A stretch of 64,000 nucleotides of DNA from Diplonema japonicum (Eukaryota > Protista > Euglenozoa: Diplonemea). Within the stretch, counting starts at the first letter, position 1. Each line of letters opens with the position of its first letter. The position numbers and the translations under genes were made by a program. Positions 5,347-51,860 of this stretch are shown piece by piece. The notes beneath the pieces are model-generated. The model was not told the DNA's origin. It made no database searches and saw only the letters and a list, made by a program, of their open reading frames with translations. Location of the stretch: assembly GCA_964019335.1 (NCBI GenBank), contig OZ025715.1:62001-126000 (forward strand). The letters run 5' to 3'.

Positions 5347-8300
5347 ATGGCGAGAACACTTGCACTTCTCAGTGCACTCAATGTTGCAACCGCAGTCACT
5401 GTCGAGTGGAGCAGGGACTCTCAGAGAGGCTCCCCGATGCAGCTGTCCGGGACGGTTGAGGCGCTGCAAGTGTACATATTCGTACCCGATGACGGGGACA
5501 TCAAGACAGTGGAGTTCTTCTTGGACAAGACTGTGGCGGGGAACACAGCCACGCACAAGGAAGGGAAGGCACCTTACGACCTTGCGGGAACATCAGGTAC
5601 GACCAGTCTGCCGCTGAACACTGTGAACCTTCCTGCTGGGGCACACTTTGTGGAGGTGCTCGTGACGAGAAAGAACGGGGCAACGGAGGAGGCACGCGGA
5701 GACTTCACGATACCTGCTATCTCGAACGGGGCGGCGCTGCTGGACGTGAGCGCGACTTCTGACAGGATGGGCGGTGTGCCGTTGGACGGGCGGACGATCC
5801 CGCACACGGAGGAGATGTACATCTTCATCGACGGATCCTCAATGGGCGACAGGGCGGTGCAGTTCTTCATGGACCGCTCGAGTGGCGTCCCCGACAGGAC
5901 AGACACCGTGACCCCCTTCGACTATGTTGGCGAGGAAACCGACGGCACAGCAGTGAAGCTCAACAAGAACGCCCTGGGGGCAGGCCTTCACACGCTCACC
6001 GCCTACGTGGAGGGGAACGGCAACCAGATTCAGAAGGTGTCGGCGATCTTCACCATTGTTGCCTCGCCCAACCTTCCAAAGTTGGAGTTCTCCCCCAACC
6101 CGGACAGGTCGGCGTCCGCACCACTGGAGGGGGCCACCCTGACCGAGGCTACGCACATCTTCATCGCCAACGACAACGGGGTGACGCAGGTGAAGTTCTA
6201 CCTGAACACGCCTTCTTCGGGGACGGCGTTCCACATTGAGGGAGGGAAACCCTTCGACTTCGGGGGGACTGTCAGCTTTTCGGTGGACCCCACAAAGCCC
6301 GCCATCGAGTGGGACCTTGCGGAGGCAGCTGAAGGAGCGAACACCGTCATTGCTGTGGTGACAGTGTCGGGCACCGATATCGAGATCCAGGCCAGCTTCA
6401 CGGTCAACAAGCCTTCCTCAGGAAAGGACTGCAACACAGCAGTGTGTGCTGACATCAAGGTGACACTGCCACGCACGCTCTCCTTCGACTCGGACGTCGG
6501 GCACATCAAAGACTCGAATGACCTGGGCACAGGGTTCACCTACGTGCTCCCACACACACCTGGTCTTGGCAACCCTTACAAACCGGCATTGCTCACAATG
6601 GACACCTCTGCGGCTGAACTCAGAGTGGGGACCACGAATGGTATCGAACACAGTACTGAGAACGATGCCGACAACTTGCTGTGCTGCGGTGTACCTGCTG
6701 CCGATGGGAAGGTCATCACTTCGGTTTGGGTTGACAAACCCGGCACGATGAGCCACGCGGGGAAGTTCGAGATGGCTGGTGTGTTCTTCGGGAATGACCA
6801 GGACAACACGGCCAAGCTTGTGTGGGTGAGCTACAAGAGTGGTGGTGCTGTGACGGCGGGCATCATGTTCAACGTCGAGATCGACGGCAGCTACATCTTC
6901 AACCACAGGGTTCCCGTCACGAGTGCTGCGGGTCAGTCCTTCCACCTGCGGCTTGAGGCCGACCCCGCGACGAAGACGATCTTAGGGGAGTACTCTCTTG
7001 ATGGCATGTCGTACATCACAGTGGGCTCCACCGTCGCCCCCGACAAGCTCTTCAGTCTCGGCACGGCAGTTGTAAACCCTGCCATCGGCACAGCCACCTT
7101 CGCAGGCATCACCACAACACACAGGAAGAACACCAGTCCATTGGTATTTATTCTGAGGGAGTTTAAGTTGGACTCTGGTGCACCTACTTTAGAGCTCACG
7201 CCCTCTCTCGTGTCCGAGTACGTGGCTAGCGGGGGCTCGAAGACCGTCACGGTGCAAATCGCTTACATCGACCCCTTGACAGACGTGGAAGTCTCGAACG
7301 TACCTGTCTGGGCCACGATCCTGCCGTTGTCGAATATCGCAACACCTGGCTCGTTCGACGTGACTCTCGACACGGCACAGGTGCCTGCTGGGACGACAGT
7401 GACAGCGACCGTGACCCTCAGCAGCGCGTCGACTGGGCTCTCTGTAGGCCTCCCCCTCTCTCTGGAGTCAGTCGATGCCTCTGCGCTGCAACTCACGATC
7501 GACCCTGTTCGGCTGGACATGATCGGGAAGCCGGACTCCGGGAGCACCGGTTCCGTGATCACGATCACGACGCATCCCCTGGTCCCCACCGTCACTTACT
7601 CTTTGAGCTGCGACGAGCCTTGGCTGAGCTGGCTCATCCCCGGACCCGCTCCTGGGGAGGTGACGGTGCTCGCAGACACGAACGGGCTGGCGGAGGGGAG
7701 CCACTCCGCAACGTGTGTGATGAGTGCCCCGAACTACGTTGACATTACGATCCCTGTGAAGCTGGTACTGGGGAACAGCAACTGCCTGCCCATGGTGTGC
7801 TCGGAGATCAGAGTCCCCGTCCCGCACAACATCACCTTCACGCAGGACAACGGTGGGTCGCTGCTGGACAAGAACGGTGTGGGGACCGGGTTCACGTACG
7901 TGTTCCCGCACTCTCCTGGGGCCGGGACATCGCTTGATGCCTACATAAAGGACAACCTGGAGGTGGACACGGCGAACGGGGAGCTGCTCGTGACGACAAC
8001 GAAGGGGATCGAGTACAAGACTGAGAACAACGCTGACAACTTACTGTCGTTCGGGTTCGCGGCACCGAACCAGATGACCTACATTTCAACATGGCTGATG
8101 AGGCCGTACACGGCGAACACGAATGGGAAGTTCGAGCAGGCGGGTGTCTTCTTCGGGCACGACCAGGACAACGTGGCGAAGGTGGTGTGGGTCTCGTACA
8201 TGCAAGGGTCGAAGAAGATATACGCCATCATGTTCCTGGTTGAGGTGGAAGGGGTCGTTGTGAAGAACGTGAAAATCAACGTGCTGAACGGACCTGAGCT

Positions 8301-9774
8301 GTCATACGAACTGCGCATCTTGGTGGACCCTTACAACCGGAAGATCTACGGAGATTACTCTCTGAACGGGGTGCTGTTCTACCCTCTGGGTGTGGTGTCG
8401 TCCATCCCTAGTGAGTTCTTCAGCTTCGACGCTGCTGGGATCGACCCTATCATCGGAACACGGAGCTTCGGTGGGATCGCCGCCTCTCAGAGGCACGGGA
8501 CGATCGCCTGCAAGTTCCGCTTCAAGGATTTCTACCTGAAGGTTGGGGAGCGGCCTCTTCCGGATCTGGAGTTTGACTTCACGCGGAAGTCGTTCGGAGT
8601 GGAGTACCCGACGAACATGGCCTTCGGGCCTGACGGGAAGCTCTACGTGACGTCCCTCTTCGGGCAGATCACTGTCCTCACCTACGACTCCAACCTCAAC
8701 GTTGTGGACAGTGCAACCTACACGACGCTGCCGGATGAGCTGGGGCCACGCCTCACGCTCGGGATAGCCATCGACCCGCACTCGACGGTCGGGGACGTCA
8801 TTCTATGGGTGGCTCACTCCAGCCCCGAGCTCCGTGCAGGCGGGTTGAACTCTGGGATGGTGTCAAAGCTGAGCGGGTCCGAGAACGGGTTCCCAACGAT
8901 GACGCACCCCTTGACAGGCCTCCCCAGGGCAGAGGCCAACCACGGGCCCAACAGCTTGCACTTCAAGGATGGGAAACTGTACTTGGTGATCGGGGGGAAC
9001 AGCGGCGCGGGGGGAGCGGTCACGGTTCCAACAGAGTTCGGGAAGCGTGAGGAGCAGTTCCTGGCGGCGGCGATTGTGGTGGCGGATGTGTTCGCCCCGG
9101 GCTTCAACGGGCAGTGCTACGCGAATGGTGAGGACCCGTGGGGGAAAATAACAGGGTGCGACGTCACGAACTGGGCGACAGGGCTGAGGAACAGCTATGA
9201 CTTCGTGTTCCATACGAACGGACAGGTGTACGCCACGGACAATGGGCTGGGGTCGTTCCACTCGGGAGCGTACCCTGTGAGGCCGACACCGCCATGCTTC
9301 GGGTTCGCAAGCCATGCGCCGTACTACGACGGCGGGCAGAACCCCTTGGAGCAGACGGACCTGCTGTACAATGTGAAGCCAGGGAGGTACTACGGGCACG
9401 GGAACCCTGCGAGGGACGAGTGTGTGTTCAAGGACGGGTCGTACCAGGGTGTCCCTCCCGACCCGAGGTTCGACCCCCCCATCGGAGACTTGGGGATGCA
9501 CGCCTCTGCGAACGGGATCATTGAGTACACAGGCAACGGGGGCTGTGGGAACCTGGCTGGCGACCTCCTCGTTCTTAGGTACTCCTCTGGAGACGACATC
9601 CTCCGTGTGGAGCTGTCCCCCGATGGGCTGCACGCTGTAAAGATCACCACCATCGCCATCAACTTCAACGACCCCTTGTCCATCAGGCAGAACACCAACG
9701 GCGACATCTTCGTGGCGGAGCATGGCGGGAAGAAGGTCACAGCCATGCGGTTCAAGGATAATTGCACACCATAG
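5347..9774 (+). CDS. Large secreted multidomain protein: 3 Ig-like repeats, 2 lectin/ConA-like domains, BACON-like domains, C-terminal glucose/sorbosone-dehydrogenase-type beta-propeller
   Basis: Signal-like N-terminus; internal repeats (VEFFLD/VQFFMD/VKFYLN...PYDL/PFDY/PFDF; two C...GTGFTYV.PH.PG domains); PTNMAFGPDGKLYV, GLRNSYDF and YATDNG propeller motifs. Intronless and GC-rich. Confidence 0.75.
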   Translation: MARTLALLSALNVATAVTVEWSRDSQRGSPMQLSGTVEALQVYIFVPDDGDIKTVEFFLDKTVAGNTATHKEGKAPYDLAGTSGTTSLPLNTVNLPAGAHFVEVLVTRKNGATEEARGDFTIPAISNGAALLDVSATSDRMGGVPLDGRTIPHTEEMYIFIDGSSMGDRAVQFFMDRSSGVPDRTDTVTPFDYVGEETDGTAVKLNKNALGAGLHTLTAYVEGNGNQIQKVSAIFTIVASPNLPKLEFSPNPDRSASAPLEGATLTEATHIFIANDNGVTQVKFYLNTPSSGTAFHIEGGKPFDFGGTVSFSVDPTKPAIEWDLAEAAEGANTVIAVVTVSGTDIEIQASFTVNKPSSGKDCNTAVCADIKVTLPRTLSFDSDVGHIKDSNDLGTGFTYVLPHTPGLGNPYKPALLTMDTSAAELRVGTTNGIEHSTENDADNLLCCGVPAADGKVITSVWVDKPGTMSHAGKFEMAGVFFGNDQDNTAKLVWVSYKSGGAVTAGIMFNVEIDGSYIFNHRVPVTSAAGQSFHLRLEADPATKTILGEYSLDGMSYITVGSTVAPDKLFSLGTAVVNPAIGTATFAGITTTHRKNTSPLVFILREFKLDSGAPTLELTPSLVSEYVASGGSKTVTVQIAYIDPLTDVEVSNVPVWATILPLSNIATPGSFDVTLDTAQVPAGTTVTATVTLSSASTGLSVGLPLSLESVDASALQLTIDPVRLDMIGKPDSGSTGSVITITTHPLVPTVTYSLSCDEPWLSWLIPGPAPGEVTVLADTNGLAEGSHSATCVMSAPNYVDITIPVKLVLGNSNCLPMVCSEIRVPVPHNITFTQDNGGSLLDKNGVGTGFTYVFPHSPGAGTSLDAYIKDNLEVDTANGELLVTTTKGIEYKTENNADNLLSFGFAAPNQMTYISTWLMRPYTANTNGKFEQAGVFFGHDQDNVAKVVWVSYMQGSKKIYAIMFLVEVEGVVVKNVKINVLNGPELSYELRILVDPYNRKIYGDYSLNGVLFYPLGVVSSIPSEFFSFDAAGIDPIIGTRSFGGIAASQRHGTIACKFRFKDFYLKVGERPLPDLEFDFTRKSFGVEYPTNMAFGPDGKLYVTSLFGQITVLTYDSNLNVVDSATYTTLPDELGPRLTLGIAIDPHSTVGDVILWVAHSSPELRAGGLNSGMVSKLSGSENGFPTMTHPLTGLPRAEANHGPNSLHFKDGKLYLVIGGNSGAGGAVTVPTEFGKREEQFLAAAIVVADVFAPGFNGQCYANGEDPWGKITGCDVTNWATGLRNSYDFVFHTNGQVYATDNGLGSFHSGAYPVRPTPPCFGFASHAPYYDGGQNPLEQTDLLYNVKPGRYYGHGNPARDECVFKDGSYQGVPPDPRFDPPIGDLGMHASANGIIEYTGNGGCGNLAGDLLVLRYSSGDDILRVELSPDGLHAVKITTIAINFNDPLSIRQNTNGDIFVAEHGGKKVTAMRFKDNCTP

Positions 9775-47390: not shown

Positions 47391-47410
47391 TTTACCAAAT
47401 CAATAGTTAT

Positions 47411-47692
47411 TCTTTTTCTTTTTCTTTTTCTTTTTCTTTTTCTTTTTCTTTTTCTTTTTCTTTTTCTTTTTCTTTTTCTTTTTCTTTTTCTTTTTCTTTT
47501 TCTTTTTCTTTTTCTTTTTCTTTTTCTTTTTCTTTTTCTTTTTCTTTTTCTTTTTCTTTTTCTTTTTCTTTTTCTTTTTCTTTTTCTTTTTCTTTTTCTT
47601 TTTCTTTTTCTTTTTCTTTTTCTTTTTCTTTTTCTTTTTCTTTTTCTTTTTCTTTTTCTTTTTCTTTTTCTTTTTCTTTTTCTTTTTCTTTC
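47411..47692 (+). repeat. (TTTTTC)n microsatellite
   Basis: About 280 bp of near-perfect hexamer repeat. Confidence 0.95.
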
Positions 47693-47712
47693 TTTTTTTT
47701 TTTTTTTTTTAA

Positions 47713-47846
47713 GGTGGTGGGGATAACATGAAAATATAAGAAGTACATCAGATGTGTTGTTCGCTATTGACCTCCTCGTCGGTCATCACCGGTAGCGCCC
47801 GAGTGGAAGAACGTAACGCAGATGCTCAGGGTGACGAACAGGCAGC
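47713..47846 (+). ncRNA. HDV-like self-cleaving ribozyme (copy A)
   Basis: P1 GGTGGTG/CATCACC; P3 ACC/GGT; L3 TCCTCGTC; P1.1 CC/GG; P4 CGCCC-GAGT/GCTC-A-GGGTG; J4/2 ACGAA; P2 GCTATTG/CAGGCAGC. Confidence 0.8.
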
Positions 47847-48038
47847 AAACTGCACGAGCGCAGAATCTTGGTTACCCGGGACGCCCCGGCTAGGGTTGAG
47901 CACACCGCACGCATTAAGGACACGACACGGAACGCAGAAGAAGCTACTGCTCGGCCGAGGAGCGCCCCCTGTAATCAAGTAGGTAGTTCGTGCTTCGTTG
48001 CACGCTAAACGCCACCTAGTGTTGCAATCAAAGCCCCA
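47713..48038 (+). mobile_element. 326-nt ribozyme-headed SINE/LTR-like repeat (copy A)
   Basis: Matches 50417-50742 except for 2 substitutions that I could see. Starts exactly at ribozyme G1 and is flanked by T-runs. Confidence 0.8.
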
Positions 48039-48520
48039 TTTTTTTTTTTTTTTTTTTTTTTCCAGGGGAGGTGCAATGGTTCGAGGCCAATACCTCGCAT
48101 AAACTTGTCTCAGGTGAGCCGGCAACTAACTTGAGGGGGTTGGGTTGCCCACCTTGGACTTGGGTTTGGTAGGCCAGAGTCTTGCTGCCCCTTTTTTGTT
48201 TAAAAATTGGGGGAAACAATAATAAAAAAAAAAAATTCTATCACGCTTTCTTGATCCCGTGGGTCACCAAAGAAACACAAAAAAGTCAAGTTTCATAGCA
48301 TCTCCCTCCCTCTTGACAAATAAGGCCGTTCTGCTTTTTCCAAAGCAAACCCGGTCTTAGTTGAACCTGAACGAAAAAAAAAGAAGAAAAAATTGCGGGG
48401 GGGGGGGGGGGGGGGATATGTATTTTCCTCTTTCTTCTTTTTTTCTTCTTCCTGCAGGCGTCTCCCGGTCCCAGGAAGAGGGGGAGGTAGGGGAGGAGTA
48501 AAAAAAAAAAAAAAAAAAAA

Positions 48521-50416: not shown

Positions 50417-50550
50417 GGTGGTGGGGATAACATGAAAATATAAGAAGTACATCAGATGTGTTGTTCGCTGTTGACCTCCTCGTCGGTCATCACCGGTAGC
50501 GCCCGAGTGGAAGAACGTAACGCAGATGCTCAGGGTGACGAACAGGCAGC
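50417..50550 (+). ncRNA. HDV-like self-cleaving ribozyme (copy B)
   Basis: Same fold as copy A. The P2 5' strand is GCTGTTG, so an A-C mismatch in copy A is a G-C pair here. Confidence 0.82.
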
Positions 50551-50742
50551 AAACTGCACGAGCGCAGAATCTTGGTTACCCGGGACGCCCCGGCTAGGGT
50601 TGAGCACACCGCACGCATTAAGGACACGACACGGAACGCAGAAGAAGCTACTGCTCGGCCGAGGAGCGCCCCCTGTAATCAAGTAGGTAGTTCGTGCTTC
50701 GTTGCACGCTTAACGCCACCTAGTGTTGCAATCAAAGCCCCA
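50417..50742 (+). mobile_element. 326-nt ribozyme-headed repeat (copy B)
   Basis: Direct repeat of 47713-48038 at an offset of 2704 nt. Confidence 0.8.
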
Positions 50743-51860
50743 TTTTTTTTTTCCTTTCTTCCGACACAAAAAAAATGGGAGGTTCCCCTTTCCCCTTTCA
50801 CACTTTCTATTTCTAGCGAATCTCTTTACTGATGGAATCGCGTTCAATAAGTGGGAAAGACAAGAAAAGAAGAAGAGGGGGGGGGAGAAAAAAAGAGGTG
50901 GCACAGGTGTGGCTGCCCTTTTTTTTTTAAATGTCGGGGAGGGGTGAACATTCCTTTCCTCCCTTTTAACACTCAGCAGTTACACCCAAGCAGTTGGTTC
51001 GATTCTTTTTTGTGAAAGAACCTGTTTCGTTGCTGTTTTTTTCCCCTCTCGTTTCTTTCTTCCTTCTTCCTCTTTCTCCCTCTTTCCCCCCCCAAGTTTG
51101 GCTTCTCTCTTTTCTGGGGCGTTTTTTTTTTTTTTTTTTTTTTTTGTATGAACAATAAAAATTGTCTGCACTAAAAGACCTATTCGCTGCTGGCGCTCTC
51201 TTTTTTCTTCTTCTTTTCTTTCACGAAAATGGAACAATTTAAAAAAAAAAAAAAAAGAGGGGGAAAAAAAAAAGAAACAACTTTCCCCACCACCCCCCTC
51301 CCGGGCTATGTTGCGGTTTTTCTTTCTTTCTTTCTTTTTCTCTTATTCTTCCTTTGCAAAAAAAAAAAAATAAAATAAAAAAATAAGGCAAGAACTTGTT
51401 GGATGGAGAATGGGTTGTGAGATCCTTTTTTTTTTTCTTTTCTTTTTTTTTTCTTTTGCATTTGAACAATGAGAAAAAAGGAAAACAAAAAAAATGACGA
51501 CTGGAAAAAAAAGGGGGGGAGATTTAACCACTTAACCCACATGTCATGCTTTTTAATGTCATGCATATATGACATTAAAAAAAGAAAAGAGAAAAAATTC
51601 ACACGAAGAGCATTTTCCTGCGAGAATTAAGTTTAATAGTTGCGTGGTCCATCATTGCACGGGTCTCAGAAAGTCCTCTGGCTATGAATGTTCCACCTGT
51701 GGCAAGTACTTCTGTACCACACCTTCTCCTTAAAAAGAACTCTTTATATGGTTAAATGGTTGCCTTTTTTTTTTTTTTTTTCTTTTTTTTTTTTCCCAAT
51801 TCTTTTTAAGTGTCGCCTCAAAAAATAGACTTTTTTCGGTTTTTAGCCTGTGGGTTAGTG

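What the first reader, a model, noticed from the sequence alone, without database searches (positions are those of the whole stretch)
47713..47846. HDV-like self-cleaving ribozyme at the exact 5' end of a repeated non-coding element
Seen in sequence: every part of the HDV nested double pseudoknot can be placed in order. P1 is GGTGGTG (47713-19) with CATCACC (47784-90), 7 bp including one G-U. P3 is ACC (47770-72) with GGT (47781-83), closing L3 TCCTCGTC (HDV genomic has UCCUCGCU). GG (47791-92) forms P1.1. P4 is CGCCC-GAGT with GCTC-A-GGGTG. J4/2 is A-C(47835)-GAA (HDV has C75-GAA). P2 is 47763-69 with 47839-46, with one bulge. J1/2 carries a 43-nt insert. The predicted cut site, before G47713, is where the GC-rich repeat body begins after the T-run/AA. 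Established: HDV-like ribozymes head R2, RTE and trypanosomatid ingi/L1Tc/SIDER retroelements. Inference: this is a ribozyme-headed short retroelement family that does not resemble the trypanosomatid 77-nt signature as I recall it.
Basis: partly seen in the sequence, partly recalled or inferred. Interest (0 to 1): 0.92.

Follow-up and report, generated by a model that had tools for sequence, protein, structure and literature searches.

The report
HDV-like ribozyme heading a short retroposon
The first 134 bases of a 326-base mobile repeat fold like the hepatitis-delta-virus self-cutting RNA, and related mobile elements in the same genome carry the same fold with different but matching helices. 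The RNA very probably cuts itself free of the long host transcripts it is made in, as known ribozyme-headed retrotransposons do.

Summary
Confirmed by sequence analysis; not shown by experiment. The repeat is a 326-nt non-coding retroposon plus a T-run. At least 595 copies exist, 98-99% identical, and all 30 inspected begin exactly at G1.

The consensus has G where window copy 1 has A47766, so copy 1 has a weakened P2. Copy 2 (50417-50550) is consensus.

A generic HDV descriptor found six element families in 355 kb of this genome and nothing in 7.1 Mb of simulated sequence. The five other families are three APE-type LINE families (L, M, C), a ~1-kb non-coding element and a compact 76-nt ribozyme. 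They keep the L3, P1.1 and J4/2 core while P1, P2 and P4 differ yet stay complementary. Each starts at its element's first base.

Rfam's HDV model matches the compact member (30.4 bits, E 0.004). It misses the SINE because of a 43-nt J1/2 hairpin (P1.2).

24 of 30 copies lie sense to neighbouring genes. About 10 carry a spliced leader at G1, so the template is a Pol II read-through RNA.

Weak points: G1 pairs with C, not U, and no raw RNA reads were available.

The scan noted this family at least 8 times elsewhere in this genome, with no follow-up. It is a new member of a known kind.

The parts
47713..48038 (+). Retroposon copy 1 (326 nt, non-coding)
   Evidence: 100% query. The boundaries come from 30 aligned loci.
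47713..47846 (+). HDV-like ribozyme of copy 1; the predicted cut is 5' of G47713. A47766 weakens P2 relative to the consensus.
47713..47719 (+). P1 5' strand, pairing with 47784-47790
   Evidence: The register control gives 6 of 6 pairs in register; the -3 register also gives 6 of 6 because of the GGU repeat.
47720..47762 (+). J1/2 insert; a 9-bp hairpin (P1.2-like) joins 47721-29 with 47754-62
   Evidence: Centroid structure (on copy 2). Homologous to the J1/2 of element X in L053.
47763..47769 (+). P2 5' strand, pairing with 47839-47846
47770..47783 (+). P3 (ACC/GGT) enclosing L3 TCCTCGTC. U47773 and G47778 match HDV U20 and G25. CC 47774-75 pairs with GG 47791-92 (P1.1).
   Evidence: RF00094 aligns this block.
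47796..47833 (+). P4 hairpin: 9 bp, one bulged A, 19-nt loop
47834..47838 (+). J4/2 A-C-G-A-A; C47835 is the candidate catalytic cytosine
   Evidence: C-N-R-A is conserved in all six families.
48039..48061 (+). 3' T-run of copy 1 (tail and/or target duplication)
50417..50742 (+). Retroposon copy 2 (99% identical to copy 1), followed by the T-run 50743-50752
50417..50550 (+). HDV-like ribozyme of copy 2; consensus sequence, full P2

Best explanation
The element is a SINE-like non-autonomous non-LTR retroposon of a euglenozoan with a Diplonema-type spliced leader. Copies lie mostly in the sense orientation between genes of polycistronic Pol II units, so they are transcribed as part of the host precursor RNA.

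The first 134 nt fold into an HDV-type nested double pseudoknot: P1, a P1.2 hairpin in J1/2, P2, P3/L3, P1.1, P4 and J4/2. This fold cuts the RNA immediately 5' of G1. The cytosine of J4/2 (C47835) would act as the general acid, and a Mg2+ ion would be held by the L3 U.G pair.

The released 5'-OH RNA ends in a U-run and is copied into T-rich sites by target-primed reverse transcription. The likely source of the enzyme is the APE-endonuclease/RT LINE families L and M. They carry a sister ribozyme, the same T-run 3' end and the same 'T-run + A' 5' flank.

Shown here: the fold, its exact position, its recurrence with compensatory helices, the retroposon features and the orientation. Inferred: catalysis, the Pol II origin of most templates and the LINE partner.
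For: 1. All HDV elements are in the right order at the stated coordinates.
2. Descriptor hits: six element families in 355 kb of real sequence against 0 in 7.1 M simulated strand-bases.
3. In the SINE, LINE-M, LINE-L and LINE-C the element's first base is defined independently by flank divergence between copies. In each, the first 6-7 nt are the only fully complementary partner within 160 nt of the 6-7 nt that follow P3'. Sliding the register breaks the pairing.
4. P1 has 2-4 pair types at five of six positions and P2 has 2-4 at all five. P3 is ACC/GGU or GCC/GGC. P4 shows U-A to C-G exchanges between LINE-L and LINE-M and between L045 and L051.
5. Invariant in all six: L3 U-C-C-N-N-G, P1.1 GG and J4/2 C-N-R-A.
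6. RF00094 matches L003:2527-2605 over the full model at 30.4 bits, E 0.0042, with the cut placed at the element's start.
7. The sister core recurs in 23 metagenome contigs with P1, P2 and CNRA in HDV order.
8. Frequent family variants inside the ribozyme fall only in the J1/2 loop (50435, 50447, 50448) and the P4 loop (50517, 50520, 50521).
9. 30 of 30 copies start at G1. 24 of 30 are sense to the longest neighbouring ORF. About 10 copies carry the SL exon at G1, which shows + strand read-through templates.
Against:
- G1 pairs with C in the SINE. All five sister ribozymes have the G1.U wobble, which in HDV contacts the catalytic metal (title of Chen et al. 2009, as cited in PMC13635239).
- P2 needs a bulged A and two G.U pairs, and window copy 1 has an extra mismatch.
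- The nested minimum-free-energy fold does not recover P1 and is no more stable than shuffles (z = +1.45).
- Rfam gives only 13.6 bits, E 7, for the SINE.
- SL-bearing copies, and L054 with its 88-nt 5' leader, show that some templates escaped cleavage.
- Copies are 98-99% alike, so there is no covariation inside the family.
Confidence: 0.8

Rival explanations
1. The fold is inherited from a ribozyme-bearing ancestor, but in this SINE it is catalytically weak or dead because of the G1-C pair and the bulged P2. It would be kept as a structured 5' module for RT, packaging or stability. The exact 5' end would come from another process.
For: G1-C in the SINE against G1.U in five sister ribozymes. 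The weak P2. SL-joined, uncleaved copies.
Against: About 99% of copies start at G1 without the SL. No other process that makes this end is visible. Subfamily variants avoid all core and helix positions. A 7-bp P1 and a two-pair P1.1 are intact.
Confidence: 0.12
2. The 5' end is a transcription start (an internal Pol III or Pol II promoter, with the T-run as Pol III terminator), and the HDV-like match is a coincidence.
For: The T-run at the 3' end would terminate Pol III. An imperfect A-box-like TAGC...AGTGG lies at 47793-47806 (seen in the sequence).
Against: That A-box-like motif lies about 80 nt in, too far from the start, and Rfam finds no tRNA, 5S or 7SL similarity. Chance cannot explain six families with the same core at their first base. 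The SL-joined copies show Pol II read-through templates.
Confidence: 0.04
4. The element is a poly(A) retroposon on the minus strand, and the 'ribozyme' is on the antisense of its 3' end.
For: Read on the minus strand, A-runs flank the element.
Against: On the minus strand the A-run would sit at the 5' end, abutting TGGGGC in every copy, while the 3' end (CCACCACC) abuts variable bases. LINE-L and LINE-M end in a T-run on their coding strand. The SL is joined to the + strand 5' end.
Confidence: 0.01

Closest known systems
R2 5' HDV-like ribozymes and the short R2 SIDE elements (Eickbush & Eickbush; PMC3774820; R2Dwi_SIDE as cited in PMC4035085)
   Same: The ribozyme sits at the 5' end of a co-transcribed non-LTR element and cuts at or near the first base. 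Short non-coding derivatives keep it. The spacing between P1 and P1' varies widely (23 to more than 700 nt in R2). The L3/P3 active site is close to that of HDV.
   Different: R2 uses a restriction-like endonuclease and a single rDNA site. Here the LINEs encode an APE endonuclease plus RT, insert at dispersed T-rich sites and end in a T-run. The host transcripts are Pol II polycistrons.
L1Tc/NARTc/ingi/SIDER ribozyme (L1TcRz, Pr77) of trypanosomatids (PMC3185411, PMC4035085)
   Same: The host is also a euglenozoan with polycistronic transcription and trans-splicing. The LINEs are APE-type and have short non-autonomous partners. The ribozyme occupies the first bases, and copies lie in intergenic regions or UTRs.
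   Different: Pr77 is a compact 77-nt unit with a single-pair P1.1 and also has promoter activity. Here the ribozyme is 134 nt with a P1.2 insert, a two-pair P1.1 and an HDV/R2-like L3. No Pr77 sequence was aligned here. The tail is T, not A.
Large HDV-like ribozymes with a J1/2 peripheral helix (drz-Agam-2, P1.2; PMC4908430)
   Same: A hairpin in J1/2 brings P1 and P2 together. The SINE and element X both have such a stem.
   Different: The sequences are unrelated, and activation by this stem has not been tested here.
Genomic HDV ribozyme (Rfam RF00094)
   Same: L3 reads UCCUCG, P1.1 is GG, J4/2 is C-G-A-A, P3 has 3 bp and P1 has 7 bp. RF00094 aligns these blocks.
   Different: G1-C instead of G1.U, a 43-nt J1/2, and the scores are below Rfam's gathering threshold.

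Membership tests
HDV-like self-cleaving ribozymes | Nested double pseudoknot with strands in the order P1-J1/2-P2-P3-L3-P3'-P1'-P1.1-P4-J4/2-P2' | tested here: met
   Met in both window copies, although P2 is weakened in copy 1.
HDV-like self-cleaving ribozymes | P1 of about 7 bp whose first nucleotide is the cleavage site, with P1' directly after P3' (PMC3774820, PMC4908430) | tested here: met
   7 bp, 47713-19 with 47784-90. G1 is the first base of the repeat in 30 of 30 copies.
HDV-like self-cleaving ribozymes | G.U wobble at the base of P1 | tested here: not met
   The SINE has G1-C47790; the five sister ribozymes have G1.U. From my own knowledge, this pair is common in the family but not universal. 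Its effect here is unknown.
HDV-like self-cleaving ribozymes | L3 with the U...G reverse-wobble pair (U20/G25; PMC13635239) and cytosines that form P1.1 with the GG after P1' | tested here: met
   U47773, G47778, and CC47774-75 with GG47791-92. Invariant in six families.
HDV-like self-cleaving ribozymes | Catalytic cytosine in J4/2 (C-N-R-A) just before P2' | tested here: met
   C47835-G-A-A. Present in all six families.
HDV-like self-cleaving ribozymes | Helices supported by compensatory change among relatives | tested here: met
   Met between families, for P1, P2, P3 and P4. Not testable within the SINE, whose copies are 98-99% identical.
HDV-like self-cleaving ribozymes | Match to curated covariance models | tested here: inconclusive
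   SINE: RF00094 at 13.6 bits, E 7. Compact sister: 30.4 bits, E 0.0042. Both are below the gathering score of 50. Canonical-looking metagenome ribozymes also fail the gathering score.
HDV-like self-cleaving ribozymes | [quoted passage not shown] | not testable with these tools
   Only assembled contigs were served.
Non-autonomous non-LTR retroposon (SINE/SIDE-like) | Many dispersed copies, no ORF, target-site duplications, homopolymer 3' end | tested here: met
   At least 595 copies and 1427 first-look candidates. Target duplication such as TTTTTTTAAA at L003. T-run of 1 to more than 30 bases.
Non-autonomous non-LTR retroposon (SINE/SIDE-like) | Shares terminal sequence with an autonomous LINE partner | tested here: inconclusive
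   blastn finds no similarity to the LINE loci. What is shared with LINE-L/M is the ribozyme type (P3 ACC/GGU), the T-run 3' end and the 'T-run + A' 5' flank. J1/2 and P2 are homologous to non-coding element X.

The most novel reading that the evidence does not exclude
Hundreds of sense-oriented, self-cleaving sites sit exactly at polypyrimidine-tract/AG trans-splice acceptors between genes of polycistronic units. Ribozyme cutting (5' of G1) and spliced-leader addition (at or 1 nt after G1) would then compete for the same junction. The retroposon family would act as a genome-wide layer of mRNA 3'-end and precursor processing. The whole LINE/SINE group would use a U-run/A-primer form of target-primed reverse transcription instead of poly(A).
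Probability: 0.2. Interest if true: 0.75.

Novelty: new member of a known kind. Interest (0 to 1): 0.55.

Why it matters
Ribozyme-headed non-LTR elements are known from animals (R2, RTE) and trypanosomatids (L1Tc/SIDER). I found no report for diplonemid-type euglenozoans in the paper library; the Diplonema genome paper does not mention ribozymes.

Here an HDV-type ribozyme heads at least six element families. These include three APE-type LINE families (L, M, C) and a SINE with at least 595 copies lying sense inside polycistrons. This has three consequences:
- It gives a ready set of natural HDV-like variants with large J1/2 inserts for biochemistry.
- It explains how these elements get a defined 5' end without their own promoter.
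- It predicts hundreds of self-cleavage sites that could affect host mRNA processing, as SIDER2 does in Leishmania.

The T-run 3' ends are an unusual feature for LINEs.

Tried and rejected
- **Rfam:** at gathering score on the whole window, and at E up to 10 on 47600-48100, there was nothing relevant. The 43-nt J1/2 insert defeats the model, and even canonical compact metagenome ribozymes fail the gathering score.
- **Minimum-free-energy folding:** uninformative for a double pseudoknot.
- **My first strict descriptor** missed copy 1 (P2 mismatch) and all the LINEs (6-bp P1). It was relaxed and re-controlled.
- **blastn of the SINE against the LINE loci:** no hit.
- **RNA evidence:** all runs were served as contigs, so no starts could be read.
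- **Divergent SINE copies** (L012, L013) were truncated or deleted and gave no information.
- **MAFFT** could not align the six families in register, so pair counts were made from the parsed helices. No covariance model was built.
- **Corrected reading:** I first took the AUG in the J1/2 of LINE-L/M to be the start codon. The long ORF is in another frame, and its first Met lies 20 nt after the ribozyme.
- **LINE class:** the restriction-like-endonuclease reading from earlier notes was not borne out for the families I tested; they are APE-type.

Full report
**The observation**

- P1 is GGTGGTG with CATCACC.
- P3 is ACC with GGT, around L3 TCCTCGTC.
- GG follows P1' and lies opposite the CC of L3 (P1.1).
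- P4 is a 9-bp hairpin with one bulged A.
- J4/2 is A-C-G-A-A.
- P2 is 47763-69 with 47839-46.

A second copy lies at 50417-50744 and is 98-99% identical. Window copy 1 is slightly atypical. 29 of the 30 genomic copies inspected have G at the position of A47766. The consensus P2 therefore has four Watson-Crick pairs, two G.U pairs, a bulged A and a closing G-C, and copy 1 has an extra mismatch. The 43-nt J1/2 insert forms a 9-bp hairpin in the centroid fold.

**The repeat**

The window is C68:62001-126000 of a 62.5-Mb assembly. All long ORFs in it are on the + strand.

A 39-nt spliced-leader exon ending in CAGTTTCTGTACTTTATTG appears in retroposed copies. It differs at two positions from the entry 'Euglenozoa 14' in PMC3795323. 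From my own memory, that entry is the Diplonema type. The host is therefore a euglenozoan with polycistronic transcription and trans-splicing. I did not name the species.

The repeat is 326 nt plus a T-run.
- The first-look search gave 1427 candidates.
- A 42-nt core pattern matches 595 places with up to 3 mismatches.
- In 30 of 30 loci, similarity begins exactly at GGTGGTG.
- The 5' flank is T-rich and usually ends in one to three A.
- The 3' end is always ...AAAGCCCCA followed by 1 to more than 30 T.
- Target-site duplications such as TTTTTTTAAA are visible (L003).

**Orientation**

The T-run abuts the + strand 3' end in every copy, whereas the bases before G1 vary. APE-endonuclease/RT LINE families in the same genome end in ...CATATA(T)n on their coding strand.

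Ten SINE copies carry the spliced-leader exon joined at the + strand 5' end. Four have SL + G1. Six have the SL's last G in place of G1, as expected from splicing at the A(-1)G(+1) acceptor behind the T-run.

24 of 30 copies lie on the strand of the longest neighbouring ORF. The RNA template is therefore the + strand, and at least part of it comes from Pol II read-through. About 99% of copies nevertheless start at G1 without a leader, so something makes a precise 5' end there.

**Is the fold more than chance?**

I used a generic descriptor:
- P1 of 6-7 bp starting with G
- J1/2 of 1-100 nt
- P2 of 5-8 bp
- P3 of 3 Watson-Crick pairs
- L3 of 7-8 nt reading U-C-C-N-N-G
- GG after P1'
- a P4 hairpin
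- J4/2 reading C-N-R-A

It found six distinct element families in the 355 kb I held and nothing in 7.1 million simulated strand-bases. The LINE loci had been fetched by reverse-transcriptase homology, so they were chosen independently of any ribozyme.

| Family | Locus | P1 / P1' | Other features |
|---|---|---|---|
| SINE | window | GGUGGUG / CAUCACC | P3 ACC/GGU, L3 UCCUCGUC |
| LINE-M | L055, L056 | GGGGCU / GGCCCU | P2 CUGGGGA / UCCCCAG, P4 CCCCUCCC / GGGGGGGG |
| LINE-L | L054, L057 | GGGGCU / GGCCCU | P4 UCUUCUCC / GGAGGAGA |
| LINE-C | L045, L051 | GGUGGGG / CCCCACU | P3 GCC/GGC; P4 CUUGC/GCAAG versus CCUGC/GCAGG |
| X | L053:8771 | GGGGUC / GGCCCU | non-coding, ~1 kb |
| compact | L003:2529 | GGGGGCC / GGUUCCU | 76 nt, J1/2 of 3 nt |

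In the SINE, LINE-M, LINE-L and LINE-C the element's first base is fixed independently, because flanks diverge there between copies. In each of these, the first 6-7 nt are the only full complement within 160 nt of the 6-7 nt that follow P3'. Sliding the register destroys the pairing, except for one alternative register in the SINE caused by its GGU repeat.

The core letters (L3 U, CC and G; P1.1 GG; J4/2 C-N-R-A) are invariant. P1 and P2 show two to four pair types at most positions. Element X shares homologous J1/2 and P2 sequence with the SINE but has a fully different, compensated P1. X also carries a second tandem unit.

**Database and environmental support**

- Rfam's HDV model RF00094 matches the compact member over its full length (30.4 bits, E 0.0042), with the cut at the element's first G. 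RF02682 follows at E 0.04.
- For the SINE, RF00094 is the only ribozyme family listed. It scores 13.6 bits, E 7, because the model cannot span the J1/2 insert and picks a false P1.
- A metagenome scan with the sister core returned 86 contigs. 23 of them have P1, P2 and C-N-R-A in HDV order, and most of those are compact.
- None of the 13 tested contigs reaches Rfam's gathering score, so Rfam's blank on the window carries little weight.

**Variation**

Public runs were served only as assembled contigs, so RNA ends could not be read. The contigs do show the family in runs labelled as two other organisms. One of these holds the neighbouring ankyrin gene at about 95% identity.

Among frequent variants, the six inside the ribozyme lie only in the J1/2 hairpin loop and the P4 loop, while the body has many more. 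This fits selection on active source copies. The table was truncated, so I treat this as suggestive.

**Mechanism**

The element is co-transcribed with host genes. The 5' 134 nt fold and cut 5' of G1, releasing a 5'-OH RNA. Its U-run pairs with an A-run primer at a nicked T-rich site and is reverse-transcribed, probably by LINE-L or LINE-M.

These two families share the ribozyme type, the T-run end and the 'T-run + A' flank. They show no other sequence similarity to the SINE.

Rare SL-bearing copies, and L054 (SL + 88 nt + ribozyme), are templates that escaped cleavage.

**Weak points**

- Catalysis is untested.
- G1 pairs with C, whereas the five sister ribozymes have G1.U.
- P2 is imperfect.
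- There is no covariation within the family.

**Comparison and novelty**

This works like the R2, RTE and L1Tc/NARTc/SIDER ribozymes (PMC3774820, PMC3185411, PMC4035085). It has a P1.2-type peripheral helix as in drz-Agam-2 (PMC4908430).

The active site resembles HDV/R2 rather than Pr77: P1.1 has two pairs here against one in L1TcRz. No Pr77 sequence was aligned.

I found no report of such ribozymes in diplonemid-type genomes. I class it as a new member of a known kind.

First readers noted the same family at least eight times on other pieces of this genome, and none was followed up.

Noticed in passing
L054-L057 (G000 C2, C78, C11, C30); 3' ends near oriented position 7985: APE-endonuclease/RT LINE families with ORFs of about 2000 aa end in ...AACTCATATA followed by 9 to about 38 T on the coding strand. 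Their 5' flank is a T-run followed by CAA or AAAAA. A T-run rather than a poly(A) 3' end is unusual for LINEs.
   Followed up: partly
L021, L027, L044, L046, L047, L050, L051, L054; genome-wide: Retroposed LINE and SINE copies carry the complete 39-nt spliced-leader exon at their 5' end, so they are retrocopies of trans-spliced RNAs. In the SINE and in L051 the leader is joined exactly at the ribozyme's G1.
   Followed up: partly
L053:8771-9803: A non-coding element of about 1 kb with two tandem HDV-like units (8771-8892 and about 9003-9128; the second has a U x U mismatch in P1). It ends in T11. This recalls the double Pr77 signature of SIDER2. L046 holds a partial copy.
   Followed up: partly
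L055:1690-8050: A LINE-M copy lies inside what looks like a GT...AG intron of an Fe/Mn superoxide dismutase gene. The SOD reading frame resumes right after CCCTCAG.
   Followed up: no
window 47410-47690: A (CTTTTT)n microsatellite of about 47 units lies directly upstream of the T-run that precedes copy 1.
   Followed up: no
L074, L087, L105, L109, L143, L084, L069, L100, L103, L130 (metagenome contigs): These are compact HDV-like ribozyme candidates with the core ACC-UCCNNGU-GGU-GGCCCU-GG, and some lack P4 (minimal type). None reaches Rfam's gathering score.
   Followed up: partly
window 47960-47990; L048:8120-8160; L045:1680-1720: The SINE body shares a short motif (CGCCCC..TGTAATCA..AGGT) with the 3' UTRs of other LINE families. 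It is too short for blastn significance and may be an RT-recognition element.
   Followed up: no
L013:300-340 (minus strand): A SINE copy has about 9 extra G between the flanking T-run and G1. These may be non-templated additions at the 5' junction.
   Followed up: no
L048:8310-8530: Two tRNA-like genes follow directly after a LINE 3' end plus A-run.
   Followed up: no
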